Below are positions 2,983 to 30,760 of a stretch of 32,877 nucleotides of DNA, in pieces (position 1 is the stretch's first letter; each line of letters opens with the position of its first letter). Both the position numbers and the translations under genes were made by a program. The stretch covers positions 1 through 32,877 of the forward strand of contig NW_021832149.1 of NCBI RefSeq assembly GCF_006345805.1, read 5' to 3'. The stretch is from Octopus sinensis. Its lineage: Eukaryota. Below the pieces are notes generated by a model that saw nothing but the letters and a program-made list of their open reading frames with translations, searched no databases and was not told where the DNA came from.

Positions 2983-4257
2983 CGAGGGGCGTTCAATAAG
3001 TAATGCCCCTGACCCACTTCTTATAGCAGTAGAGCAACGAAACTTGGCACAGTTATTAGTCTTTTTCTACTTAGGAACCACCCAGAGTTACGCATTTCTT
3101 CCATCGTTTGATGCGGCTCTGTAGAAGAACCCAGCTTGGTCCTCCAACCTCAACGTGACTTCAGAAATCAAGGCTGCATCATCTGGGAAACGCTTTCCTT
3201 TCAAAAACAACTTCATGGCTGGGAAGAGGTGAAAATCCGAGGGTGCAAGGTCAAGAGAGTAGGGGCATGGAGAAGGAATTCATAGCCGCACGCCTGTGCT
3301 TCTGATCTGGCGACAAGCGAGTTGTGGACCGGAGCGTTGTCCTGCAGGAGGAGGATGCCTTTGCTGATCTTGCCCCGCCTCTTGATTTTGTTAACTTCTC
3401 TTAATTTCCTCAAAAGTGAAGCATAATAGGCTCCTGCAATTGTGGTACCCTTTGCCAGGAAATCTGTCATCACTACTCCGTCCTGGTCCCAGAAGACTGT
3501 GAGCATGACCTTGCCAGCGGAGGGATGCAACCTTGCCTTCTTTGGAGGGGTGAGTCACGGTGCTTCCACTGCATTCACTGGCTTTGGTCTCTGGATCATC
3601 GTGATGGACCCAGGTTTCATCCTGTGTAATCAGTCTTTTGAAAAAATTGACTCATCTTCTTGGCACATCTCCAAATTCCCCCTCGAGCACTCGACGCGTT
3701 CTTGCTTCTGGAAAGGCGTGAGCAACCTGGGAATCCATCTGGCAGACACCTTTTGCATATGCAAATGGTCATGAATGATAGTTTCCACAGACCCGGTACT
3801 AATCTTGACCTCATGGGCTATTTGGCGAATAATTATGCGTCGATCTTCCAAAATGGCAGCCTCAACTTGACGGACAGATGCCTCGTCAATGGCAGAAGGG
3901 GGCGACCAGATCTGGGAGCTGTTTCCACAAAGTTCCGACCATGTTTGACTTCACGATGCCAGCGTTTTACAAGGTCATATGATGGGGCATCATCACCATA
4001 AGTTACTTTCATTTCATCAAAAGTCTCCCGTGGTGTGCGTCCTTTCAAATACAAAAACCGGATCACTGCTCGACACTCAACAGGCTCCATTTCACACTTG
4101 ACTCGGTTCAAACACCTGTAAATCAGAAACCACAATTAATTCAGAGCTGTAATTTGCCACTTACTCTATAGAGATATAAATAATTGCACATGCAAAATTT
4201 CAGCTAGATCAAACAACTGCAAGTGGGTCAGAGGCATTACTTATTGAACGTCCCTCG
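2983..4257 (-). mobile_element. Full-length mariner (Tc1/mariner DD34D, irritans-like) element, 1275 bp
   Basis: 37-bp TIRs cgaggg(g/a)cgttcaataagtaatgcc(c/t)ctgacccactt with 2 mismatches; TA on both flanks. Confidence 0.95.
3056..4090 (-). pseudogene. Mariner transposase pseudogene
   Basis: MEPVECRAVIRFL..., WIPRLL, DETW, QDNAP and APSDF motifs split across several frames by frameshifts. Confidence 0.9.
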
Positions 4258-5384: not shown

Positions 5385-7053
5385 TTAACATTTGGGCTGC
5401 TTCATTGGACGCTTCAGGAGAACCGAGCCATTGATTTGAAAACCTGAAAAATACTAACCATCACACATAATTTCCACATAAACAGCGACGTAGACCGCCT
5501 CTAACTAAAAGGAAGACAATGCGGCAAAATGCCTTTGAATGTCGCATCATATCCATTCGGAAACATCTTTTAACCACCAAGTGTCGAAGTGCTTCCCTTG
5601 ACCAAATTTGCATACATGAGGCTGATAACATCATAAGACTTGGAAGGCAGCTCCTTGAGCAACACTCTTTGTCTGATAACCTAGAATACATGCCCAAAGA
5701 AGCCGCACGACCGTACCGTAACGTATCATCAGATGAAAGGATCAGCCTTTATGAGCAGAAGACTATGCATGGATAAGTCAGTAGAAAGCACCGAGAGATA
5801 GTAATATTGATCATCAAAGCAGTCTATCATAGACTAATAGCCAGATTATTACCTCCCACTTTGAAGGGTATGTCTTTTGCAATCCAGGAACAGGAGATAT
5901 CCTCCAAGTACCTGATGCAAAAAAGGGATAGAGATGCAGGACAATCAGTAAAACGTGACAACCGATGCAGACTTTGTGGGGTTAAAACCGAAGGTATCAC
6001 GCACACCATAAGCTGTTGTCCGAAAATGTCATCACAGAATTATCTACCGATGAGACATGATGCTGTAGCTAGGACACCCTATAATGAAATCCATCGGAAG
6101 AATAACATCCAGGACAAAGAAATAAGAAGAAAACAACAGTATAGGCGCAGGAGTGGCTGTGTGGTAAGTAGCTTGCTAACCAACCACATGGTTCCGGGTC
6201 AGTCCCACTGCGTGGCATCTTGGGCAAGTGTCTTCTGCTATAGCCCAGGGTCCGACCAATGCCTTGTGAGTGGATTTGGTTAGACGGAAATTGAAAGAAG
6301 CCTGTCGTATATATGTATATATATATATATTATATATGGTGTGTATATGTTTGTGTCTGTGTTTGTCCTCCTAGCATTGCTTGACAACCGATGCTGGTGT
6401 GTTTACGTCCTCGTCATTTAGCGGTTCGGCAAAAGAGACCGATAGAATAAGTACTGGGCTTACAAAGAATAAGTCCCGGGGTCGATTTGCTCGACTATAA
6501 AGGCGGTGCTCCAGCATGGCCGCAGTCAAATGAATGAAACATGTAACAGAGTAAAAGAGTAAAGAGTATTGTAGAAGCCATAGCCTCTCGTAATAAAAAG
6601 GAATACTGGTGGAATGTCCCAGTGAAGACCTCAATAAAATGTAAGTACAGCAGACCTGATATAATGATTTGGGATAGAGAATAGAAACTGTGCACAGTTG
6701 AGGAAATTTACATAATATTAACATAAAGTTGAAGATCAGTGACAAAGAGAATACCTATGCTGGACTATTGAGAAATCTGCAATTACTCTACCCAGATTAC
6801 AAGTTCAGGTTCATACCTGTAATTATTAGCGCCTTGGGATATGTAACATACTGCCTAAATACCAATCTTGAGAAATTAGGCTTCTCAAAACCAGAAAGGA
6901 GAAAGCTGATTCAAAGACTAGAGACCCAGTCCATCACTGGAACTGTACAAATCTGTAAAACTTTCCAGAAGTTTATCATTTAAATATATATGAGCATGTC
7001 TAGACATGCAACTGTATGCATGAGAATACATACATAAAGCAAAACATACAAAT

Positions 7054-11864: not shown

Positions 11865-12065
11865 CAGATTTTTAGCACGCCGGGCGAAATGCTTTGTGGT
11901 GTTTCGTCTGTCTTTACCTTCCGAGTTCAAATTCCGCCGAGGCCGACTTTGCCTTTCATGCTTTCCGGGTCGATGAATTAAGTAACAGTTGCGTACTGGG
12001 GTCGATCTAATCGACTGGTCCCCTCCCCCAAAATTTCGGGCCTTTTGCCTAGAGTAGAACAGAAT
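11865..12065 (+). mobile_element. SINE family C, older variant
   Basis: ttagcacgccgggcgaaatgc...gaggccgactttgcctttcat...tcgactggtcccctcccccaaaatt. Confidence 0.8.
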
Positions 12066-12092
12066 ATTAGTGCCAGGCAGTTTTTAGTTTAA

Positions 12093-13660
12093 CCCTTTTG
12101 ATACCAACCTGGCTGAAACCGGCTCTGTCTCTGTAGTTCAAATGTCTTGTTTTCATAAGTTCTGAATTAAAATCTTCCACCAAACCTTAGTCACAATTTA
12201 TGTTCCTAACACTAGCTGAATGATAACTAAGTTATTTTACTAAATTCTTTGTTATATTTAACCTTTTGATCCAACCCGGCTGAAACCAGCTCTGTCTCTG
12301 TAGTACAAATGTCTGTTTTCATAAGTTCTGAATTAAAATCTTCCACCAAACTTAGTCACAATTTACGTTCTTAACACTAGCTGAATGATAACTAAGTTAT
12401 TTTACTAAATTCTTGGTTATATTTAACCCTTTTGATACCAACCCGGCGCTGAAACCAGCTCTGTCTCTGTAGTACAAATGTCTGTTTTTCTAAGTTTCGA
12501 ATTAAAATCTTCCACCAAACCTTAGTCACAATTTATGTTCCTAACACTAGCTGAATGATAACTAAGTTATTTTACTAAAAATTCTTGTTATATTTAACCC
12601 TTTTGATACCAACCGCGAAACCAGCTCTGTCTCTGTAGTACAAATGTCTTGTTTTCATAAGTTCTGCAATTAAATCTTCCACCAAACCTTAGTCACAATT
12701 TATGTTCCTTAACACTAGCTGAATGATAACTAAGTTATTTTACTAAATTCTTTGTTATATTTAACCCTTTTGATACCAACCCGGCTGTGAAACCAGCTCT
12801 GTCTCTGTAGTACAAATGTCTTGTTTTCATAAGTTCTGAATTAAAATCTTCCACCAAACCTAGGTCACAATTTATGTTCCTAACACTAGCTGAATGATAA
12901 CTAAGTTATTTTACTAAATTCTTTGTTATATTAACCCTTTTGATACCAACCCGGCTGAAACCAGCTCTGTCTCTGTAGTACAAATGTCTTGTTTTCATAA
13001 GTTCTGAATTAAAATCTTCCACCAATCCTTAGTCACAATTTATGTTCCTAACACTAGCTGAATATAACTAAGTATTTTACTAATTCTTTGTTATATTTAA
13101 CCCTTTTGATACCAACCCGGCTGAAACCAGCTCTGTCTCTGTAGTACAAATGTCTTGTTTTCATAAGTTCTGAATTAAAATCTTCCACCAAACCTTAGTC
13201 ACAATTTATGTTCCTAACACTAGCTGAATGATAACTAAGTTATTTTACTAAATTCTTTGTTATAGTTAACCCTTTTGATACCAACCCGGCTGAAACCAGC
13301 TCTGTCTCTGTAGTACAAATGTCTTGTTTTCATAAGTTCTGAATTAAAATCTTCCACCAAACTTTAGTCACAATTTATGTTCCTAACACTAGCTGAATGA
13401 TAACTAAGTTATTTTACTAAATTCTTTGTTATATTTAGCCCTTTTGATACCAACCCGGCTGAAACCAGCTCTGTCTCTGTAGTACAAATGTCTTGTTTTC
13501 ATAAGTTCTGAATTAAAATCTTCCACCAAACCTTAGTCACAATTTACGTTCTTAACACCAGCTGAATGATAACTAAGTTATTTTACTAAATTCTTTGTCA
13601 TATTTAAAATTAATTGAAAGGAACACAGAGCATTTCAACAGAAATATGGTAACGAAAGTA
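12093..13660 (+). mobile_element. piggyBac-type MITE 1 with left end expanded to 9 tandem ~169-bp units
   Basis: TTAA|CCCTTTTGATACCA start; units begin at 12093, 12262, 12427, 12598, 12765, 12935, 13101, 13270, 13439; single right end ...TGGTAACGAAAGTA|TTAA. Confidence 0.85.
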
Positions 13661-13756
13661 TTAAGCAAAGTTTAGGTTAATTAAAATGTTTATGATATAT
13701 TTCAACTGCTAAAAGACAAATTTACTGCAGTTACCGCGGTAAAACTTTTTCTCTTA

Positions 13757-14025
13757 TGGTAAAAATTGTAAGGGGTAAAGACCCCCTTCGGTCATGAGTG
13801 ACCATGGGTTTTCACCTAGAAAGTTACCCTCCCAGGCACAAGTCTGGGCAAGGTTGTTTATGGAAGGCCAGCAGTCGCCCATGCATACCAGCCTCCCCTC
13901 TCCACGCCACCAGTGTGTCCAAGGGAAAGACAAGGTCGATACAGACGCTTGGCACCTGTGACGTCGCAACTCATTTCTACAGATAGTGAACTGGAGCAAC
14001 GTGAAATAAGTGTCTTTAAAAACAC
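13757..14025 (-). mobile_element. 5'-truncated SINE-like element with CORE-like segment
   Basis: Reverse complement reads ...gacacttatttcacgttgctccagttcactatctgtagaaatg..., similar to the body at 11450-11530. Confidence 0.45.
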
Positions 14026-14140
14026 AATATTTGCCCAGTGTCGCTATCTGTCAGGATTCCCAGACATCGATTGTATCCTGCTCCTTATCCATTATCAATG
14101 GGAAATACCTAAAGAGGCAACTCTGGATAGGCCCTATTAA

Positions 14141-15782
14141 CCCTTTTGTTACTGTATTTATTTTGAGATGCTCTTTACTCTTTTACTCTTTTACTTGTTT
14201 CAGTCATTTGACTGCGGCCATGCTGGAGCACCGCCTTTGTCGAGCAAATCGACCCGGGACTTATTCTTTTGTAAGCCCAGCTTATTCTATCGGTCTCTTT
14301 TGCCGAACCGCTAAGTGACGGGGACGTAAACACACCAGCATCGGTTGTCCAAGCAATGCTAGGGGGACAAACACACTCACACAAACACAACACACCACGC
14401 ATATATATATACATATATACGACAGGCTTCTTTCAGTTTCCGTTCTACCAATTCCACTCACAAGCAAGGCTTGGTCGGCCCGGGGCTATAGCAGAAGACA
14501 CTTGCCCAAGATGCCACGCAGTGGGACTGAACCCAGAATCATGTGGTTGGTAAGCAAGCTACTTACCACAGCCACTCCTGCGCCTATGCTCTGTGTTTCT
14601 TTCAATTAATTTAAATATAGCAAAGAATTTAGTAAAATAACTTAGTTATCATTCAGCTAGTGTTAGGAACTAAATTGTGACTAAGGTTTGGTGAAGATCT
14701 TAATCAAAACTTATGAAAACAAGACATTTGTACTACAGAGCCAGAGCCGGTTTCAGCCGGGCTGTATCAAAAGGGTTAATATAACAAAGAATTTAGTAAA
14801 ATAAACTTAGTATCATTCAGCTAGTGTTAGGAACATAAATTGTGACTAAGGTTTGGTGGAAGATCTTAATTCAAAAACTTATGAAAACAAGACATTTGTA
14901 CTACAGAGCCAGAGCCGGTTTCAGCCGGGCTGGTATCAAAAGGGTTAAATATAACAAAGAATTTAGTAAAATAACTTAGTTAACATTCAGCTAGTGTTAG
15001 GAACATAAATTGTGACTAAGGTTTGGTGGAAGATTTTAATTCAAAACTTATGAAAACAAGACATTTGTACTACAGAGCCAGAGCCGGTTTCAGCCGGGCT
15101 GGTATCAAAAGGGTTAAATATAACAAAGAATTTAGTAAAATAACTTAGTTAACATTCAGCTAGTGTTAGGAACATAAATTGTGACTAAGGTTTGGTGGAA
15201 GATTTTAATTCAAAACTTATGAAAACAAGACATTTGTACTACAGAGCCAGAGCCGGTTTCATCCCCTCGGTATCAAAAGGGTTAAATATAACAAAGAATT
15301 AGTAAAATAACTTAGTTAACATTCAGCTAGTGTTAGGAACATACATTGTGACTAAGGTTTTGGTGGGAGATCTAATTCAAAACTTATGAAAACAAGACAT
15401 TTGTACTACAGAGCCAGAGCCGGTTTCAGCCGGGCTGGTATCAAAAGGGTTATATAACAAAGAATTTAGTAAAATAACTTAGTTAACATTCAGCTAGTGA
15501 GGAACATAAATTGTGACTAAGGTTTGGTGGAAGATTTTAATTCAAAACTTATGAAAACAAGACATTTGTACTACAGAGCCAGAGCCGGTTTCAGCCGGGC
15601 TGGTATCAAAAGGGTTAATATAACAGAATTTAGTAAAATAACTTAGTTATCATTCAGCTAGTGTGTTAGGAACATAAATTGTGACTAAGGTTTGGTGGAA
15701 GATCTTAATTCAAAACTTATGAAAACAAGACATTTGTACTACAGAGCCAGAGCCGGTTTCAGCCGGGCTGGTATCAAAAGGG
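14141..15782 (-). mobile_element. piggyBac-type MITE 2 with 7 tandem left-end units; SINE A nested in its right end
   Basis: TTAA|CCCTTTTGTTAC right end at 14137-14152; unit ends (aaaggg) at 14775, 14944, 15113, 15281, 15449, 15614, 15782; outer TTAA degenerate (ttgc). Confidence 0.85.
14175..14585 (-). mobile_element. SINE A, full length, nested in MITE 2
   Basis: 7-bp TSD atgctct (14168-14174 / 14586-14592). Confidence 0.9.
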
Positions 15783-15855
15783 TTGCTATAGCTACACACA
15801 CGCGCGCGCATAGACTACATACGTGATGGTGTCTAAGAAAAGGTTGATAGCTTAC

Positions 15856-16054
15856 CTCGTTTTTCGGATCTCTCATCTTCTGCAAGATGAAAAAGAAAAT
15901 CTGCGTATGTCTTCTTCTTACGAGAACGGAAATAGAATTTCATAGCCGCGTATAACTCTTCTTCCGTTATACTAATACAAATAGATTCGAGTATAGCGGT
16001 TAAGCGATCAACATCAACTTTGTGTTGACGAGACACGGATAACAATATTTCTGC
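15856..16054 (-). CDS. Host gene coding exon 4 (phase 0 to 1): AEILLSVSRQHKVDVDRLTAILESICISITEEELYAAMKFYFRSRKKKTYADFLFHLAEDERSEKR; EF-hand-like helix-loop-helix pattern
   Basis: Acceptor tttaaattttag|, donor GAG|gtaagc; 199 nt open; 'L..IL.SI.I.ITEEEL' and 'Y.DFL..L' resemble degenerate calmodulin-type EF-hand spacing (inference). Confidence 0.8.
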
Positions 16055-16380: not shown

Positions 16381-16481
16381 TGTATATATATACTTGTGTG
16401 CGCATGTGTGGATATGTGTGCGTGTATGAGTACGTACATGCACATATATGTTTATGTGTGTGTGTGCACGTGCATGTACAT

Positions 16482-16879
16482 AGGCGCAGGAGTGGCTGTG
16501 TGGTAAGTAGCTTGCTAACCAACCACATGGTTCCGGGTTCAGTCCCACTGCGTGGCATCTTGGGCAAGTGTCTTCTGCTATAGCCCCGAGCCGACCAATG
16601 CCTTGTGAGTGGATTTGGTAGACGGAAACTGAAAGAAGCCTGTCGTATATATATATATGTGTGTGTGTTTGTGTATCTGTGTTTGTCCCCCTAGCATTGC
16701 TTGACAACCGATGCTGGTGTGTTTACGTTCCCGTTACTTAGCGGTTCGGCAAAAGAGACCGATAGAATAAGTACTGGGCTTACAAAGAATAAGTCCCGGG
16801 CTCGATTTGCTCGACTAAAGGCGGTGCTCTAGCATGGCCGCAGTCAAATGACTGAAACAAGTAAAAGAGTAAAAGAGTA
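16482..16879 (+). mobile_element. SINE A, full length
   Basis: Complete head, body and (gagtaaaa)n tail. Confidence 0.9.
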
Positions 16880-17269
16880 AACCACGCCGTAAGTTTTTTG
16901 TTTTTGCATAACGGCATGAATTCCTGTGTGTAGAATACAATTTCGCAAACATTTTCTGAAAATTCCAAAATATAAAAGAGTTATGAGGGGTTATATGGTG
17001 TGCCTAAAGCAAATATTTCATTTCTGCCACAAAATGACAGCTTCTAAATCCTGTTTTCTGACAAGCTAAAAACTTATCAAACTTTAAACCTCTGTAACTT
17101 AAAAAAAAAAAATTCTGGAAAAAGTGAAATATCCACTGAGATGCAGCATGGAAAAACACACCAATACACCAAATGTTAAAACTTTCACTAAACTTTAAAA
17201 TTTCCACTGGTGCAGCCAACCAGAAAAAATCCTTTTATGCTATCATAGTACATTATATTATATTATATT

Positions 17270-19137: not shown

Positions 19138-20315
19138 ATGTTTCTTTATTAGCCACACAGGGCTGCACACAGACAGAACAAATTACAAGGTAAAGCTTTT
19201 CTTTTGGGGGTAAAAAGAGGGGGTTGGTTTTCGATCAAAAGGGATCGTAAAAGGAAAGAAAGAGGACAAAAAAGGGGAGGATTTAAAAAAAAGGTGGGGA
19301 GAGGGAAAAAAAGAAAAGGGGAGAGGGAAAAAAAAGTTGATCAATAGGGATCGTAATCACAGAAATGTCAATATGAAGTGTAAAGGGGAGGACAGGTGAG
19401 GTTTACCCGTGGAAAGAAAAGCATACGGAAAAGACCACGGTAACCTCGGTCAATGAAGTCATATGTTATATTTCTTTTTTTTTTTTTTGCAAATAAGCAA
19501 CTCTCTGTATTAATTTTTACGGTTCATAGAATCATAGTCAAGGTGGCGTCGTCATTCATACGTGCCATCCTTGCTACATTCACCCATCTTTTTTTAAAAC
19601 ATTCGCTAAACAAAACTTGCCTCTCTACTCTCACTTTCCTCTTCAAGTGATACTTGAAGAAGTTGATGAGAGATTGACCAGAGAGAAAAGTGTTTGTCTC
19701 TAATCCTTTCAGGCGCGTCAACCAGATACATTCTTTCGCCATAGCCGCTAGTATGATAAAAATAGCTCTTCCTTCCCGTTTGAAGGAAGGAGGCGTGACG
19801 ATATTAACGATAGACTCGGCTGATAAACCGACACGTCCCACACGTGACAACAGTCGTTCGACATAAGCCCACAGGTCGGAAATTGCTAGACACTGCACGA
19901 TTGCGTGCAGAGCGGTTTCGTCGCTCTGACCGCATCTCGGGCAAGTCGGCCCCGTGTTTCTCAAATCATGCCTATAGAGCTTATTCCGAACGGGTAGCGC
20001 TTCTCGGTAGCACCGCCAGGCCAGGGATCTCTGGAAGTTGTCCATAGGTCCCGGGCCAAAAGTCGTTTGAAACAGGCGGGTCAGGTATTCCTCGTCGACG
20101 CCCAGGTTTGCCCCGAGATCGTCGTCGTACCTCCCCTCCACTAATCCCCTATAGAATGCTTTGGTTGTGTTGAAGTCACTCAAGGTCGACCCGGGACGGC
20201 AGAGTTGCTTGAGAGCAACGCGACACTCGCAGTGCCATTCGCCCTTCCTCGGCCTCTTTTTGATCCACGACTGCAGTTCGGTCATGGAGACGAGTTGCGG
20301 GAAAGCTAAACATAG
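19138..20315 (-). mobile_element. Tx1/L1-clade LINE 3' fragment (ORF2 C-terminal zinc-finger region and 3' UTR)
   Basis: ORF 19524..20348: AWRCYREALPV...CPRCGQSDETALHAIVQC...W; 3' end ...gcagccctgtgtggctaataaagaaac abuts (ATCT)n. Confidence 0.85.
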
Positions 20316-20735
20316 GGCTAAACAAGGGGCTAAACATAGCGGGGACAAACAAGGACAGACAAAGGAATTAAGTCGATTACATTGACTCCAGTACGTAACT
20401 GGTACTTAATTTATCGATCCCGAAAGGATGAAAGGCAAAGTCGACTTCAGCGACTATTTCTTTACTACCCACAAGGGGCTAAACGTAGAAGGGACAAACA
20501 AAGACAGACAAACGGATTATATCGACCCCAGTGCGTAACTGGTACTTATTTAATCGACCCCGAAAAGATGAAAAGCAAAGTCGACCTCGGCTACACACAG
20601 AGGGGACATGATTATAGGGACAACAAAGACAGACAAACGGATTATATCGACCCCAGTGCGTAACTGGTACTTATTTAATCGACCCCGAAAAGATGAAAAG
20701 CAAAGTCGACCTCGGCTACACACAGAGGGGACATG
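20316..20735 (-). mobile_element. SINE C body/tail fragments in tandem (one ~125-bp period)
   Basis: Three repeats of ...gaggtcgactttgc...agtaccagttacgcactggggtcg... Confidence 0.8.
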
Positions 20736-20955
20736 AGAAGCAGCCAAGAAGCATGCCAATGACCGCAAAAAGTGAAAAACAACTGTTGAGGCCTTATGCT
20801 CCACAAGGGGCAAACAGGATTAAGAAGAAGAAAAAGAAAAAGAAGGAGAAGAAGAAGAAGATGAAAAAGAAGAAGAAGAAATGTATGTATGTGAGCATAT
20901 ATATGTGTATATAGATATATGTATATGTGTGTGTTTACAGATATAGATACTTACA

Positions 20956-21008
<53 letters not shown>

Positions 21009-21203
21009 GCAAGATTTTTTATGTGAAGTCGTGTGTTGAAACAGATATTGTTATATCTCGGAATGGTCATTTTGCCAGTTTAGCCAATAAAAACACACGC
21101 ACTATATAGAGATATAAGCATGCGCAAATGAAGACATACAATAGAAATTCAAAATGGCTGACGGTTAGTAAGGTGAGACACAAATAAGAAAGAAGAAAGC
21201 AAA

Positions 21204-21248
21204 GGACCACTGATGCGGTCACAGGAGTGTGACGAAAGAACTCTGGCC
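21204..21248 (+). ncRNA. Type-I hammerhead-like motif 6
   Basis: GG(A)CCA CUGAUGCG GUCAC-AGGAGU-GUGAC GAAA G-AA-C UC UGGCC; A9C variant; 2-nt stem III loop. Confidence 0.6.
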
Positions 21249-21362
21249 GAAATAAGATGAAGATTAATGTAAAAAATAAATAACACTGAGGCAAAATAAC
21301 ACCAAATATATAGTGCGTGTGTCTTTATTGGCTAAACTGGCAAAATGACCATTCCGAAATAT

Positions 21363-21414
<52 letters not shown>

Positions 21415-21609
21415 GCAAGATTTTTTATGTGAAGTCGTGTGTTGAAACAGATATTGTTATATCTCGGAATGGTCATTTTGCCAGTTTAGCCAATAAAAAC
21501 ACACGCACTATATAGAGATATAAGCATGCGCAAATGAAGACATACAATAGAAATTCAAAATGGCTGACGGTTAGTAAGGTGAGACACAAATAAGAAAGAA
21601 GAAAGCAAA

Positions 21610-21654
21610 GGACCACTGATGCGGTCACAGGAGTGTGACGAAAGAACTCTGGCC
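21610..21654 (+). ncRNA. Type-I hammerhead-like motif 7 (identical to motif 6)
   Basis: Same sequence 406 bp downstream. Confidence 0.6.
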
Positions 21655-21784
21655 GAAATAAGATGAAGATTAATGTAAAAAATAAATAACACTGAGGCAA
21701 AATAACACCAATATATAGTGCGTGTGTCTTATTGGCTAAACTGGCAAAATGACCATTCCGAAATATAACAACATATATATATAT

Positions 21785-21827
<43 letters not shown>

Positions 21828-22306: not shown

Positions 22307-22905
22307 GTTTCTTTACTGCCCACAAGGGGCTAAACACAGAGAGGGGGCAAACAAGGACAGACAAACGGATTAAGTCGATTACACCGACCCCAGTGCGTAA
22401 CTGGTACTTAATTTATCGACCCCCGAAAGGATGAAAGGCAAAGTCGACCTCGGCGGAATTTGAACTTAGAACGTAACGGCAGACGAAATACCTATTTCTT
22501 TACTGCCCATAAGGGGCTAAACACAGAGAGGAGACAAACAAGGACAGACAAACGGATTAAGTCGATTACACCGACCCCAGTGCGTAACTGGTACTTAATT
22601 TATCGACCCCCAGAAAGGATGAAAGGCAAAGTCGACCTCGGCGGAATTTGAACTCAGAACGTAACGGCAGACGAAATACCTATTTCTTTACTGCCCATAA
22701 AGGGCTAAACACAGAGAGGAGACAAACAAGGACAGACAAACGGATTAAGTCGATTACACCGACCACAGTGCGTAACTGGTACTTAATTTATCGACCCCCG
22801 AAAAGATGAAAGGTAAAGTCGACCTCGGTGGAATTTGAACTCAGAACGTAACGGCAGACGAAATACGGCTACGCATTTCGCCCCGCGTGCTAACGGTTCT
22901 GCCAG
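22307..22905 (-). mobile_element. SINE C: one head plus 3 tandem ~187-bp body/tail units
   Basis: Junction aaagaaatag|gtatttcgtctg at 22491 and 22679. Confidence 0.9.
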
Positions 22906-22965: not shown

Positions 22966-23527
22966 CTGGGTTGTCCGGAAAGTTCGTACCGATTTTTAAA
23001 GGAAGGAAAAGGTCAATAAATACTTGCCCTTACACTTTTAATGAACCAAATATGAACCATTTTGTTGCACAATGCGTCTCCATCTTTCCTTTACCTTGAA
23101 AATACCCTCTTTCCAGAATTGAGGTGGTTTCATGGCAAAGAATTCATCAAGGTATCTTTTTACGTCATCCAAGGAATTGAAATTTTTACCATTAAGACTA
23201 TTCTGCAGAGACCTGAATAAGTGTAAATCCGAAGGAGCAACATTTGGTGAATATGTAGGGTGGGGTAACACATCCCAGCCGAGCTGCAGCAATTTTTGTC
23301 TGGTTCCCAAAGCATCAAGTGCTGAAAATGAACTTTGTTATCTTCCATTTCAAAGGGTTACATAATTAACACAGGTTATAGGAACATAAACCTTCTTCCT
23401 CGAAAAGATAGTTTAAACTGTGCTCTAAATGGAGGTGTAGTCAAATCCTATTTTATGGACTCAACCACGTTCTAAAATAAGTCGAAAGGTAAGCTACTAT
23501 AATCGGCACGAACTTTCCGGACAACCA

Positions 23528-24467: not shown

Positions 24468-24572
24468 TGGTAACAAATTCACGCCTGCTCCTATATAGTA
24501 ACCAATCAACACCAAATTTCTCCTTATAGATCTTTAAAAAATCCCGTTTTCCAAACAAAAATTACTATATGT

Positions 24573-24980
24573 AGGCGCAGGAGTGGCTGTGTGGTAAGTA
24601 GCTTGCTTACCAACCACATGGTTCCGGGTTCAGTCCCACTGCATGGCATCTTGGGCAAGTGTCTTCTGCTATAGCCCCAGGCCGACCAATGCCTTGTGAG
24701 TGGATTTGGTAGACGGAAACTGAAAGAAGCCTGTCGCATATATGTATATGTATATATATGTGTGTTTGTGTGTGTGTGTTTGTCCCCCTAGCATTGCTTG
24801 ACAACCGATGCTGGTGTGCTTACGTCCCCGTCACTTAGCGGTTCGGCAAAAGACCGATAGAATAAGTACTGGGCTTACAAAGAATAAGTCCTGGGGTCGA
24901 GTTGCTCGATTAAAGGCGGTGCTCCAGCATGGCCGCAGTCAAATGACTGAAACAAGTAAAAGAGTAAAAGAGAAAAAGAG
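24573..24980 (+). mobile_element. SINE A, full length
   Basis: Complete head to tail. Confidence 0.9.
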
Positions 24981-25857: not shown

Positions 25858-26275
25858 TATACTCTTTACTCTTTTACTCTTTTACTTGTTTCAGTCATTT
25901 GACTGCGGTCATGCTGGAGCACCGCCTTTAGTCGAGCAAATCGACCCCGGGACTTATTCTTTTGTAAGCCCAGTACTTATTCTATTGGTCTCTTTTGCCG
26001 AACCGCTAAGTAACGGGGACATAAACACACCAGCATCGGTTGTCAAGCGATGCTAGGGGAACAAACACAGACACACAAACACACACACGCATATATATTA
26101 TATATATATATATATATATACGACGGGCTTCTTTCAGTTTCCGTCTACCAAATCCACTCACAAGGCTTTGGTCCGGCCGAGGCTAAGTAGAAGACACTTG
26201 CCAAGGTGCCACGCAGTGGGACTGAACCCGGAACCATGTGGTTGGTAAACAAGCTACTTACCACACAGCCACTCA
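25858..26275 (-). mobile_element. SINE A, near full length
   Basis: Reverse complement from tail (tactcttt)n to head. Confidence 0.9.
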
Positions 26276-26423
26276 TGTATATGTAAAGTTATAGCAGAAG
26301 CATGTTCCCCGTTTGGCTCTCAACCTTTAAGTACCCACATTTTGACTCATCACGTGATGGTCAAGTCCCTCTAGCTTTAGCAGGTTGTCCACCCTATCAC
26401 ATGACAGACCAGCCAATTGCACT

Positions 26424-26980: not shown

Positions 26981-27313
26981 CTATTGCGCTACCCTCACCT
27001 ATATAAGGAAGCCTTCCCTGCCATTTCTTCAGTGTGATGAGCTTGCACGATGGAGTCCAGATATTCGACAGAGAGCCAGTTTTATTTTCGCAGGAAGCCT
27101 CAGCCAGCCTTTGACACATACGTCTGTTTTCCTATTCTACATTGCATACATCATCGCCATGTACCATTTGCATGTTAAACCATTGTGTATACACACTGGC
27201 CGTTCCTTCAAGATGTATCTCCTACAGCTTTGCCGTCTTAACACTTTTTAACGGGGTTGAATAAATCGTTGCACTTAATCCCAGTTTCTTAATTCTTCCT
27301 TTATCTATACACG

Positions 27314-28094
27314 GCGAACTGGCAGAAACGTTAGCACGCGGGGCGAAATGCGTAGCCGTATTTCGTCTGCCGTTACGTTCTGAGTTCAAATTCCGCCGAG
27401 GTCGACTTTGCCTTTCATCCTTTCGGGGTCGATAAATTAAGCACCAGTTACGCACTGGGGACGATGTAATCGACTTAATCCGTTTGTCTGTCTTTGTTTG
27501 TCCCCTCTGTGTGTAGCCCCTTGTGGGTAGTAAAGAAATAGGTATTTCGTCTGCCGTTACGTTCTGAGTTCAAATTCCGCCGAGGTCGACTTTACCTTTC
27601 ATCCTTTCGGGGTCGATTAAATAAGTACCAGTTACGCACTGAGGTCCATATAATCGACTTAATCCATTTGTCTGTCCTTGTTTGTCCCCTCTGTGTGTAG
27701 CCCCTTGTTGGTAGTAAAGAAATAGGTATTTCGTCTGCCGTTACGTTCTGAGTTCAAATCCCGCCGAGGTCGACTTTACCTTTCATCCTTTCGGGGTCAA
27801 TTAAATAAGTACCAGTTACGCACTGGGGTCGATATAATCGACTTAATCCATTTGTCTGTCCTTGTTTGTCCTCTCTGTGTGTAGCCCCTTGTGGGTAGTA
27901 AAGAAATAGGTATTTCGTCTGCCGTTACGTTCTGAGTTCAAATCCCGCCGAGGTCGACTTTACCTTTCATCCTTTTGGGGTCGATTAAATTAGTACCAGT
28001 TACGCACTGGGGTCGATATAATCGATTTAATCCGTTTGTCTGTCCTTGTTTGTCTTCTCTGTGTTTAGCCCCTTGTGGGTAGTAATGAAATAAG
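27314..28094 (+). mobile_element. SINE C: one head plus 4 tandem 184-bp body/tail units
   Basis: Units start at 27358, 27542, 27726, 27910 with junction aaagaaatag|gtatttcgtctg. Confidence 0.92.
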
Positions 28095-28290: not shown

Positions 28291-28398
28291 ATGTGTTTAG
28301 GGTGGTAAGCAAGCTGAATCGTTAGCATGCCGGTCTAAATTCTTAGAGAAATTTCGTCCGTCGTTACGCTCTGCGTTGAAATTCAACCGAGGTCAACA

Positions 28399-28706
28399 TA
28401 GGCGCAAGATGGCCGTGTGGTAAGTAGCTTGCTTACCAACCACATGGTTCCAGGTTCAGTCCCACTGCGTGGCACCTTGGGCAAGTGTCTTCTGCTATAG
28501 CCCCGGGCCGACCAATGCCTTGTGAGTGGATTTGGTAGACGGAAACTGAAAGAAGCCTGTCGTATATATATATATATATGTGTGTATATGTGTTTGTGTG
28601 TCTGTGTTTGTCCCCCTAGCATTGCTTGACAACCGATGCTGGTGTGTTTATGTCCCCGTCACTAGCGGTTCGGCAAAAAGAGATCGATAGAATAAGTACT
28701 GGGCTT
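28399..28706 (+). mobile_element. SINE A, 3'-truncated
   Basis: Ends at aagtactgggctt, where Helitron sequence begins. Confidence 0.85.
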
Positions 28707-30065: not shown

Positions 30066-30760
30066 TTTTTTCTCTAGTTTCAGCTCAGAGCTGCGGCCAT
30101 GCTGATGCACCGCCGTTTTGCTACACTGTTATTACTAAGAGCCTCCTCTAATATGTGGCACTTGGTGAAGCATGGAGTTTAATATAGCTACCCTCATTTG
30201 CTCCTCTTGCCGTGAGGTAGGTTCATCTGGGACTCTCGACAAGAAGAGGTTCAGCTTTGATTTGAAAACCCCTACATCTACTTTGTACAAGTTCCTCAGA
30301 CTCTTTGGGAGAATATTAAAAAGCTGTGGACCCTTGAAACCCAGGCTGTTGCAGTAACTGGTCCTGAAGCGTGATGGCATTGCTGGGACCTTTGGCACTA
30401 TGCAGTGTCGTCCCGTTCTGGCATTGGTGTAGCTTTCAATGCCAAAATTTAGCACAATTCCTTCCAGGATCTTCCAGATGTATATTACTGCATACCTCTC
30501 CCGTCTTCTCTCCAGGGAGTAGAGTCTTAGCTGTTTCAACATTTCCCAGTAGCTGAGCTGTTGCAAAGAGACGATCTTCTTTGTGAATCTTCTCTGGATT
30601 GCTTCAATGTCTGCTGTTAATTTCACACTGGTGGGTGACCATAGCTGTGAGCAGTAATTCTGACAGCTGCCCAACAACGATGACAAACAACAGAAACTAG
30701 GGTTTTGAACCTTGACCATCAGATCTTTTTGCATCTCTCGACTCGGACTATATATGTCTT
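30066..30760 (-). mobile_element. CR1-clade LINE 3' fragment with intact 3' tail
   Basis: YCSQLWSP...IQRRFTK...YSLERRRERY..IYIWKILEG...GPQLFNILP...FKSKL; stop at 30135; tail ggcggtgcatcagcatggccgcagctctgagctgaaactagag(A)n. Confidence 0.88.

What the first reader, a model, noticed from the sequence alone, without database searches (positions are those of the whole stretch)
12093..15782. Two piggyBac-type MITEs, each with its left end amplified into a ~169-bp satellite (9x and 7x)
Seen: the unit runs from the terminal TTAA|CCC to an internal TTAA (...gttatatTTAA), so every junction recreates TTAA|CCCTTTTGATACCA. Each array has only one right end (LnR), which rules out simple nested insertion of whole elements (that would give LnRn). 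The arrays carry their own diagnostic variants (array 1: ccaaccc, ccagctctgt, aagttctg; array 2: ccagccc, ccggctctgg, aagttttg), implying independent expansion or homogenisation, or spread of pre-multimerised subfamilies. Inference: a transposon end turning into a nucleosome-sized satellite; any internal left end could pair with the single right end to give size-laddered mobile units.
Basis: partly seen in the sequence, partly recalled or inferred. Interest (0 to 1): 0.7.

Follow-up and report, generated by a model that had tools for sequence, protein, structure and literature searches.

The report
Octopod piggyBac-like MITEs with multiplied left ends
Two old copies of a small non-coding piggyBac-like transposon sit tail to tail in an octopod genome, each with its 169-bp left end repeated in tandem (9 and 7 times); this is a tidy but fairly ordinary case of a mobile element seeding a short satellite-like array.

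Summary
There are two 169-bp tandem arrays: 12093-13607 on the + strand (9 units) and 15782-14611 on the - strand (7 units). Every unit starts CCCTTTTGATACCA, and 12 of 14 internal junctions read TTAA|CCC. Each array is followed by one homologous 52-bp right tail ending at a TTAA. The monomer would be 221 bp with a 12-bp inverted repeat (11/12), CCC...GGG termini and no coding capacity, which fits a piggyBac-type MITE.

New points:
- The elements lie in opposite orientations, 472 bp apart.
- Element B carries a 411-bp SINE in its tail.
- Element A's right end and B's outer TTAA have decayed.
- Units differ from their own array consensus by only about 1% and the two consensuses by 3%, while the right tails differ by 17% and the SINE by about 5% from its family consensus.

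So the arrays grew or were homogenised in place, long after insertion.

How the first left-left junction formed is unresolved: self-insertion at the internal TTAA or TTAA microhomology. I could not reach any other genomic copy or an autonomous partner, so mobility and a size ladder remain inference. I rate it a new variant of a known kind (tandem-repeat-bearing MITEs), of moderate to low interest.

The parts
12089..12092 (.). TTAA flank (target-site duplication) at the left end of element A
12093..13607 (+). Array A: 9 tandem copies of the 169-bp left part (terminal CCCTTTTGATACCA through the internal TTAA). Central units A5-A8 are near-identical. A1 keeps a B-type G. A2 and A9 share two private variants.
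13608..13660 (+). Single right tail of element A (about 52 bp). Its terminus is decayed: GTAACGAAAGTA instead of GTAACAAAAGGG.
13661..13664 (.). TTAA flank at the right end of element A
13665..14136 (.). 472-bp spacer between the two elements, not part of either. It has no inverted symmetry. Segment 13839-13981 is a fragment of another dispersed repeat, 82% identical to O. vulgaris L062:7087-7228.
14137..14140 (.). TTAA flank at the right end of element B
14141..14174 (-). Outer part of element B's right tail, with an intact terminus (CCCTTTTGTTAC on the + strand, i.e. GTAACAAAAGGG|TTAA in element orientation)
14175..14592 (-). Full-length tRNA-related SINE of about 411 bp (14175-14585) inserted into B's tail, plus the second copy of its 7-bp target duplication ATGCTCT (14168-14174 and 14586-14592). 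The tail of A serves as the empty site.
14593..14610 (-). Inner part of element B's right tail
14611..15782 (-). Array B: 7 tandem copies of the 169-bp left part. There are two unit types: B1, B6, B7 versus B2, B4, B5, with B3 mixed.
15783..15786 (.). Outer flank of element B reads TTGC, not TTAA (decayed or rearranged target site)

Best explanation
Two copies of one non-autonomous piggyBac-like MITE inserted at TTAA sites 472 bp apart, right ends facing each other, in an octopod genome. The monomer is about 221 bp: a 169-bp left part plus a 52-bp right part. In both copies the left part, from the terminal TTAA|CCC to the internal TTAA at position 166-169, is reiterated head to tail, giving L9R and L7R. 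The first L-L junction arose through a TTAA-dependent event, probably once in a common ancestor, because both arrays use the same one of three internal TTAAs. That event was either self-insertion into the internal TTAA followed by loss or bypass of the extra right end, or slippage between the flanking and the internal TTAA. Most of the present copies were then made and homogenised in place by unequal exchange or gene conversion, long after insertion, probably with some exchange between the two inverted arrays. Both elements now look immobile. Shown: the anatomy, the piggyBac hallmarks, and the relative ages. Inferred: the mechanism of the first duplication, unequal exchange as the growth process, and inter-array conversion.
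For: Anatomy.

piggyBac hallmarks:
- TTAA at 3 of 4 flanks.
- CCC at every unit start and GGG at B's right end.
- L versus reverse-complemented R identical at 11 of the first 12 bases.
- A second in-register block, GCTCTGT at positions 30-36, reached by 80 of 100,000 shuffles.
- No coding capacity; the 41-aa ORF in each unit has no homologue.

Late, local growth:
- Units differ from their own array consensus by 1.0-1.3% substitutions.
- There are four near-fixed array-specific differences.
- Central units are most alike and edge units keep variants of the other array.
- The right tails differ at 9 of 52 sites, against 5 of 169 for the array consensuses (Fisher p = 0.0009).
- The SINE inside B's tail is about 4.9% from its family consensus.

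General propensity: a SINE family in the same window shows the same build, one head followed by 3 or 4 tandem bodies.

Not an inverted segmental duplication: homology stops exactly at the element ends and the spacer has no inverted symmetry.
Against: Only two copies were available. No monomer, no empty site for the MITE itself, and no autonomous piggyBac with matching ends could be examined. B's outer flank is TTGC, so one of the two target duplications is not intact. The tail comparison rests on 52 bp, and 3 of its 9 differences are CpG transitions. Many 1-bp indels look like long-read noise (36 events, 25 of them homopolymer-length changes), so exact copy numbers need read support. The window cannot say whether unequal exchange, slippage or repeated self-insertion added the units.
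Confidence: 0.65

Rival explanations
1. Transposase-made, pre-multimerised elements. A copy inserts into the internal TTAA of another copy, giving L[LR]R. The transposase then pairs the outer left end with the inner right end and moves L-L-R as a unit. Iteration gives LnR subfamilies, and A and B arrived already as multimers.
For: The unit boundary lies exactly at TTAA|CCC in both arrays and uses the same one of three internal TTAAs. Only 1 of 9 available 5-bp direct-repeat pairs would give this boundary under a pure microhomology model. T. ni piggyBac can use either of two tandem 5' ends with one 3' end (PMC3030938).
Against: Units within an array are about 99% alike and carry array-specific variants, whereas the tails are 17% apart and a SINE about 5% diverged from its family consensus sits in B's tail. 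The present copies are therefore much younger than the insertions. No LRn or LnRn by-products appear in the window. This rival may still explain the very first L-L junction.
Confidence: 0.2
2. One composite foldback-like element, or an inverted (palindromic) duplication of a single LnR element, rather than two insertions.
For: The two arrays form a 3.7-kb quasi-palindrome with arms up to 389 nt at 96% complementarity. The outer ends are perfect inverted repeats (CCCTTTTGATACCA). The array consensuses are much closer to each other than the tails are.
Against: Each arm is a complete element with its own right terminus abutting a TTAA. Homology stops exactly at those termini, and the 472-bp spacer has no inverted symmetry. 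The composite's outer flanks (TTAA and TTGC) do not form a matched duplication. The tails differ by 17%.
Confidence: 0.08
3. Assembly artefact: one or a few units inflated into arrays by the assembler.
For: There is a high rate of 1-bp indels, mostly homopolymer-length changes, typical of noisy long-read consensus. Copy number in such arrays can be mis-estimated.
Against: Units carry private and position-specific substitutions and structured sub-types: A2 and A9 share two variants, and B1, B6, B7 differ from B2, B4, B5. The two arrays have different fixed variants and different flanks. Arrays of 1.2-1.5 kb are easily spanned by long reads.
Confidence: 0.04

Closest known systems
Tandem-repeat-containing MITEs: DTC84/pearl in bivalves (PMC3879986), miDNA4 in Xenopus (Tc1/mariner; as reviewed in PMC12628747), terMITEs
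   Same: A small non-coding element carries a short array of roughly 100-170-bp repeats whose number varies between copies. Unit variants are ordered along the array. These elements are proposed as seeds of satellite DNA, and short AT-rich direct repeats at the array borders are invoked for expansion.
   Different: In those elements the array is internal and bounded by unique left and right flanking modules. Here the repeated unit is the left terminus itself, inverted repeat and TTAA included, so every unit carries a potential transposon end and there is no unique left module. The superfamily also differs: piggyBac-like, with TTAA targets.
Xstir, a Xenopus MITE (called a piggyBac-MITE in PMC2872659), and its tandem arrays (Hikosaka & Kawahara 2004; described in PMC2872659 and PMC12628747)
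   Same: A MITE that PMC2872659 assigns to piggyBac exists as a MITE, as tandem arrays and as composites of both, with lineage-specific expansion.
   Different: The Xstir arrays are described as derived from internal sequence of the MITE, and a stem-loop processing model between neighbouring copies was proposed. Here the unit spans the terminus to an internal TTAA. I could not read the original paper.
CMITE arrays in Acropora corals (PMC2872659)
   Same: These are piggyBac-related MITEs (TTAA duplication, CCYT terminal motif) found in tandem arrays attributed to replication slippage rather than transposition.
   Different: The CMITE arrays consist of full-size elements, sometimes with the intervening sequence. 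Here only the left 169 of about 221 bp is reiterated and there is a single right end.
Foldback-type elements with tandem-repeat arms (Tetris in Drosophila virilis, PMC4079207)
   Same: The arms are inverted, built of tandem repeats, differ in copy number and are a source of satellite DNA.
   Different: Each arm here is a complete element with its own right terminus and TTAA flank. I found no evidence that the composite moves as a unit.
Engineered piggyBac vectors with duplicated 5' ends (Handler et al. 2004, as described in PMC3030938)
   Different: These are artificial constructs of the T. ni element with marker genes between the ends, not a natural array of 169-bp ends.

Membership tests
piggyBac-superfamily non-autonomous element (MITE) | TTAA target-site duplication at both ends | tested here: met
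   Element A has TTAA at 12089-12092 and 13661-13664. Element B has TTAA at 14137-14140, but its outer flank is TTGC (15783-15786). That makes 3 of 4 flanks.
piggyBac-superfamily non-autonomous element (MITE) | Termini 5'-CCC...GGG-3' (CCYT motif) and a short terminal inverted repeat | tested here: met
   Fifteen of the 16 units start CCCTTTTGATAC; A2 starts CCTTTTGAT-CC, lacking one C and the A of GATAC. B's right end is GTAACAAAAGGG, matching 11 of 12 bases. A's right end is decayed to GTAACGAAAGTA. A second in-register block lies at positions 30-36 (80 of 100,000 shuffles).
piggyBac-superfamily non-autonomous element (MITE) | Small size and no coding capacity | tested here: met
   The inferred monomer is 221 bp. 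The only ORFs in the units are 31-45 aa and have no homologue. No Rfam family matches the arrays.
piggyBac-superfamily non-autonomous element (MITE) | An autonomous partner in the same genome encoding a piggyBac (DDE_Tnp_1_7) transposase with matching ends | not testable with these tools
   There is none in the window (Pfam). No octopod genome could be searched by DNA. O. vulgaris is reported to hold 6 piggyBac families among its recently active repeats (474 insertions; PMC13282606), but their ends are not given.
piggyBac-superfamily non-autonomous element (MITE) | Many dispersed copies with unrelated flanks, and empty or occupied sites | tested here: inconclusive
   The window holds two copies with unrelated flanks and no others. 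There are none in 20 kb each of O. vulgaris and Argonauta and none in the metagenome contigs.
Tandem-repeat-containing MITE (DTC84 / miDNA4 type) | Internal array bounded by unique left and right modules that carry the inverted repeats | tested here: not met
   The array begins at the first base of the element. The left inverted repeat is part of every unit, and only the right module is unique.
Tandem-repeat-containing MITE (DTC84 / miDNA4 type) | Copy number of the repeat varies between copies of the element | tested here: met
   9 versus 7 units.
Satellite DNA | Long, abundant arrays (tens to thousands of units, many loci) | tested here: not met
   At this locus there are only 9 and 7 units. 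Genome-wide abundance could not be measured.
Foldback element | The whole inverted structure is bounded by one matched target duplication and moves as a unit | tested here: not met
   The outer flanks are TTAA and TTGC, and each arm has its own inner terminus plus TTAA.

The most novel reading that the evidence does not exclude
The piggyBac transposase itself makes end-multiplied elements. A copy inserts into the internal TTAA of another copy, and the outer left end is then paired with the inner right end. This would create a family of LnR elements whose internal ends are all usable. Such a family would move as a size ladder, leave orphan left-end arrays behind on excision, and so provide a direct, transposase-driven route from a MITE to a nucleosome-length satellite in cephalopod genomes.
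Probability: 0.2. Interest if true: 0.55.

Novelty: new variant of a known kind. Interest (0 to 1): 0.33.

Why it matters
Transposon-to-satellite transitions are well documented, but the step that makes the first tandem junction is rarely visible. Here that junction coincides with the transposase's own target and cleavage site (TTAA|CCC), and every unit keeps a complete left end. A genome-wide census could therefore separate a transposase-made origin from a recombination-made one. It could also test whether internal ends are used, through size ladders and orphan arrays. Cephalopod genomes are very repeat-rich and, as far as my literature searches show, their satellite-like repeats are little described. 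The same window also holds SINEs with multiplied bodies, which hints at a general tendency in this genome. If nothing beyond this locus is found, it is simply a decayed repeat of no functional consequence.

Tried and rejected
1. Two scans of the metagenome contigs. A 28-mer of the left end gave 0 hits. TTAACCCTTTTGATACCA gave 60 hits, all chance matches: blastn of the unit and tail against them found nothing.
2. Using the 41-aa ORF inside each unit as a handle to find other copies in the protein collection gave no homologue.
3. Reaching octopod DNA through window LINE ORFs. This yielded 20-kb loci from Argonauta hians (L061) and O. vulgaris (L062). Both share the SINE but hold no copy of the unit. 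Two ENA loci were fetched: L063 shows no similarity to the window, and L064 could not be compared because its file was missing.
4. Exact look-ups of three window ORFs, to retrieve the same locus from other assemblies, found nothing on record.
5. A full-text search for the end sequences found only unrelated primers.
6. An Rfam search of the region gave only sub-threshold hits in the flanks: microsatellite-driven miRNA look-alikes and a weak tRNA-like SINE head. The arrays are therefore not RNA gene arrays.
8. I considered and rejected three readings: a single foldback element or palindromic duplication, the 169-bp unit as a complete mobile element in its own right (its 3' end, ...GTTATAT, has no inverted repeat or GGG), and an assembly artefact.
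Full report
**Observation**

The window is repeat-rich eukaryotic DNA. Tandem Repeats Finder reports two arrays with period 169: 12088-13607 (9.0 copies, 94% matches) and 14611-15784 (7.0 copies, 95%). The motif TTAACCCTTTTGWTAC, allowing up to 2 mismatches, occurs 16 times, all within 12089-15786. Shuffles predict 0.05 occurrences.

I cut the arrays at each CCCTTTTG and aligned the units. This gave nine units on the + strand (A1-A9, 12093-13607) and seven on the - strand (B1-B7, 15782 down to 14611). Twelve of the 14 internal junctions read TTAA|CCC. The two exceptions are TTAG before A9 and ATAA before B3.

The array consensuses differ at 5 of 169 positions, four of them nearly fixed. The coordinates given are exactly the outer first bases of the two elements.

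**Anatomy**

- **One right tail per array.** After the last unit of each array comes one homologous tail of about 52 bp.
- **Element A.** The tail is 13608-13660, followed by TTAA (13661-13664). Its terminus has decayed to GTAACGAAAGTA.
- **Element B.** The tail is split. The outer part, 14141-14174, ends in an intact GTAACAAAAGGG next to TTAA (14137-14140). The inner part is 14593-14610.
- **SINE in B's tail.** Between the two parts sits a full-length tRNA-related SINE of about 411 bp (14175-14585) with a 7-bp target duplication ATGCTCT. The uninterrupted tail of A serves as its empty site.
- **Orientation.** The locus is two LnR elements with right ends facing each other across a 472-bp spacer. 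The spacer has no inverted symmetry.
- **Outer flanks.** They read TTAA for A and TTGC for B.
- **Quasi-palindrome.** Together the arrays form a 3.7-kb quasi-palindrome with arms up to 389 nt at 96% complementarity.
- **No other copy.** The unit and the tail occur nowhere else in the window.

**What kind of element it is**

The inferred monomer is 221 bp, made of a 169-bp left part and a 52-bp right part.

- It shows TTAA at 3 of 4 flanks.
- It has CCC...GGG termini.
- The left end and the reverse-complemented right end are identical at 11 of the first 12 bases.
- They share a second in-register block, GCTCTGT at positions 30-36, which only 80 of 100,000 shuffles reach. This recalls the terminal plus subterminal repeats of piggyBac ends.
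- There is no coding capacity. The 41-aa ORF in each unit has no homologue, and no Rfam family matches the arrays.

These are the hallmarks used in the literature for piggyBac-derived MITEs: a TTAA duplication and a CCYT terminal motif (PMC2872659). The window has no piggyBac transposase; Pfam finds only mariner and LINE remnants. I could not search the host genome, so an autonomous partner remains untested.

The host is an octopod. LINE ORFs in the window match proteins of Argonauta hians, Octopus bimaculoides and O. vulgaris. The SINE is shared with O. vulgaris and, in part, with Argonauta.

**Relative ages**

| Comparison | Divergence |
|---|---|
| Units vs own array consensus | 1.0-1.3% substitutions |
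| Array A consensus vs array B consensus | 5/169 (3%) |
| Right tail of A vs right tail of B | 9/52 (17%; three are CpG transitions) |
| SINE in B's tail vs rough consensus of seven copies | about 4.9% |

- The difference between the tails and the array consensuses is significant (Fisher p = 0.0009).
- Indel events are as frequent as substitutions (36 versus 32). Twenty-five of the 36 are homopolymer-length changes, so they are probably long-read noise.
- The elements are therefore old, while the present units were generated or homogenised much later and in place.
- The pattern within the arrays fits unequal exchange. Central units are nearly identical (A5-A8, B5). Edge units keep variants of the other array: A1 has the B-type G, and B1, B6, B7 have the A-type GATAAC. 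A2 and A9 share two private variants. B has two unit types (B1, B6, B7 versus B2, B4, B5) with B3 mixed.
- The two array consensuses are much closer to each other than the two tails are. This is not expected if each array simply grew from its own founder unit. Gene conversion between the two inverted arrays in cis is the simplest explanation, but it rests on a 52-bp tail and stays an inference.

**Origin of the first L-L junction**

The monomer has TTAA at positions 75, 166 and 171. Both arrays use position 166, which suggests a single origin in a common ancestor. Two routes give identical junctions.

- **(a) Self-insertion.** One copy inserts into the internal TTAA of another, giving L[LR]R. 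The extra right end is then lost, or the transposase pairs the outer left end with the inner right end, which mobilises L-L-R directly. T. ni piggyBac with duplicated 5' ends can use either 5' end with one 3' end (Handler et al. 2004, as described in PMC3030938).
- **(b) Slippage or illegitimate recombination** between the flanking TTTAA and the internal TTTAA.

Only 1 of 9 available 5-bp direct-repeat pairs spaced 100-200 bp apart gives this boundary, which mildly favours a TTAA-specific process. Against a transposase-specific process, a SINE family in the same window shows the same build: one head plus 4 x 184-bp bodies at 27313-28092, and 3 x 188-bp bodies plus one head at 22308-22905. Multiplication of one part of a mobile element is therefore a general habit of this genome. 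I leave the first step open and commit only to local growth afterwards.

**Rivals**

- **Ready-made multimers.** Transposition of finished 7- and 9-mers is contradicted by the youth and array-specificity of the units.
- **Foldback element or palindromic duplication.** This is unlikely. Each arm ends at its own terminus and TTAA, homology stops exactly there, the spacer is asymmetric, and the outer flanks do not match.
- **Assembly artefact.** This is unlikely given the unit-specific substitutions and structured sub-types. Exact copy numbers still need read support.

**Comparison with what is known**

Tandem repeats inside MITEs and their link to satellites are well described:

- DTC84/pearl in bivalves (PMC3879986)
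- miDNA4 and Xstir in Xenopus (reviewed in PMC12628747)
- arrays of full-size piggyBac-related CMITEs in corals (PMC2872659)
- tandem hAT MITEs in cod (PMC12368964)
- Tetris in Drosophila (PMC4079207)

The review states that terminal inverted repeats of DNA transposons can seed satellites. The difference here is that the repeated module is the terminus itself, with its inverted repeat and the TTAA, and that there is a single right end. I therefore rate it a new variant of a known kind, in a group (cephalopods) for which my searches found no description of such repeats.

**Limits**

All attempts to find further copies failed or were impossible with these collections. Copy number in the genome, the existence of monomers, empty sites, a size ladder and the autonomous partner all remain open. 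The census and read checks listed under next steps would settle them quickly for anyone with the assembly.

**Verdict**

The mechanism is partly resolved: late growth in place is shown, while the origin of the first junction is open. Interest is moderate to low.

Noticed in passing
window 27313-28092 (+) and 22308-22905 (-); also 20490-20736: A tRNA-related SINE family shows the same build of one part single and the rest in tandem. One head is followed by 4 x 184-bp bodies (27358-28092), and 3 x 188-bp bodies are followed by one head (22867-22905). There is also a 2 x 125-bp piece of the same family. A monomeric copy lies just left of element A (about 11872-12049). The periods (169, 184, 188) are all near nucleosome length.
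   Followed up: partly
window 14175-14592: A full-length SINE of about 411 bp is inserted in the right tail of element B, with a 7-bp target duplication ATGCTCT. The window holds five other copies at 89-91% identity (6138-6563, 16479-16881, 24572-24976, 25865-26277, and the shorter 28397-28706). It is 83% identical to a copy in O. vulgaris (L062:7336-7757).
   Followed up: yes
window 12093-15782: The two arrays form a 3.7-kb quasi-palindrome (arms up to 389 nt at 96%). If transcribed it would give a long hairpin RNA, and it could be a site of instability or of gene conversion between the arms.
   Followed up: partly
window 12093-13607 and 14611-15782: One- and two-base indels are as frequent as substitutions (36 versus 32 events), and 25 of the 36 are homopolymer-length changes. 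This suggests an unpolished long-read assembly.
   Followed up: partly
window 13839-13981: Part of the spacer between the two elements is a fragment of another dispersed repeat, 82% identical to O. vulgaris L062:7087-7228.
   Followed up: no
window 3213-4135 (-) and 23038-23310 (-): At 3213-4135 there are remnants of a mariner-type transposase (Pfam HTH_48 and Transposase_1), broken into several frames. The ORF at 23038-23310 looked like a mariner transposase C-terminus by eye but matched no Pfam family.
   Followed up: partly
window 19524-20348 (-) and 30135-30734 (-): These are LINE reverse-transcriptase C-terminal remnants (zf-RVT in the first). Their closest proteins are from Argonauta hians, O. 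bimaculoides and O. vulgaris, which identifies the host as an octopod.
   Followed up: yes
window 20963-21812: A 406-bp unit is repeated 2.1 times at 99% identity, flanked by (AT)n microsatellites. Its origin was not examined.
   Followed up: no
window 15833-16045 (-): A 70-aa ORF lies immediately right of element B in non-repetitive sequence. It has no Pfam match, and whether it is an exon of a host gene is unknown.
   Followed up: no
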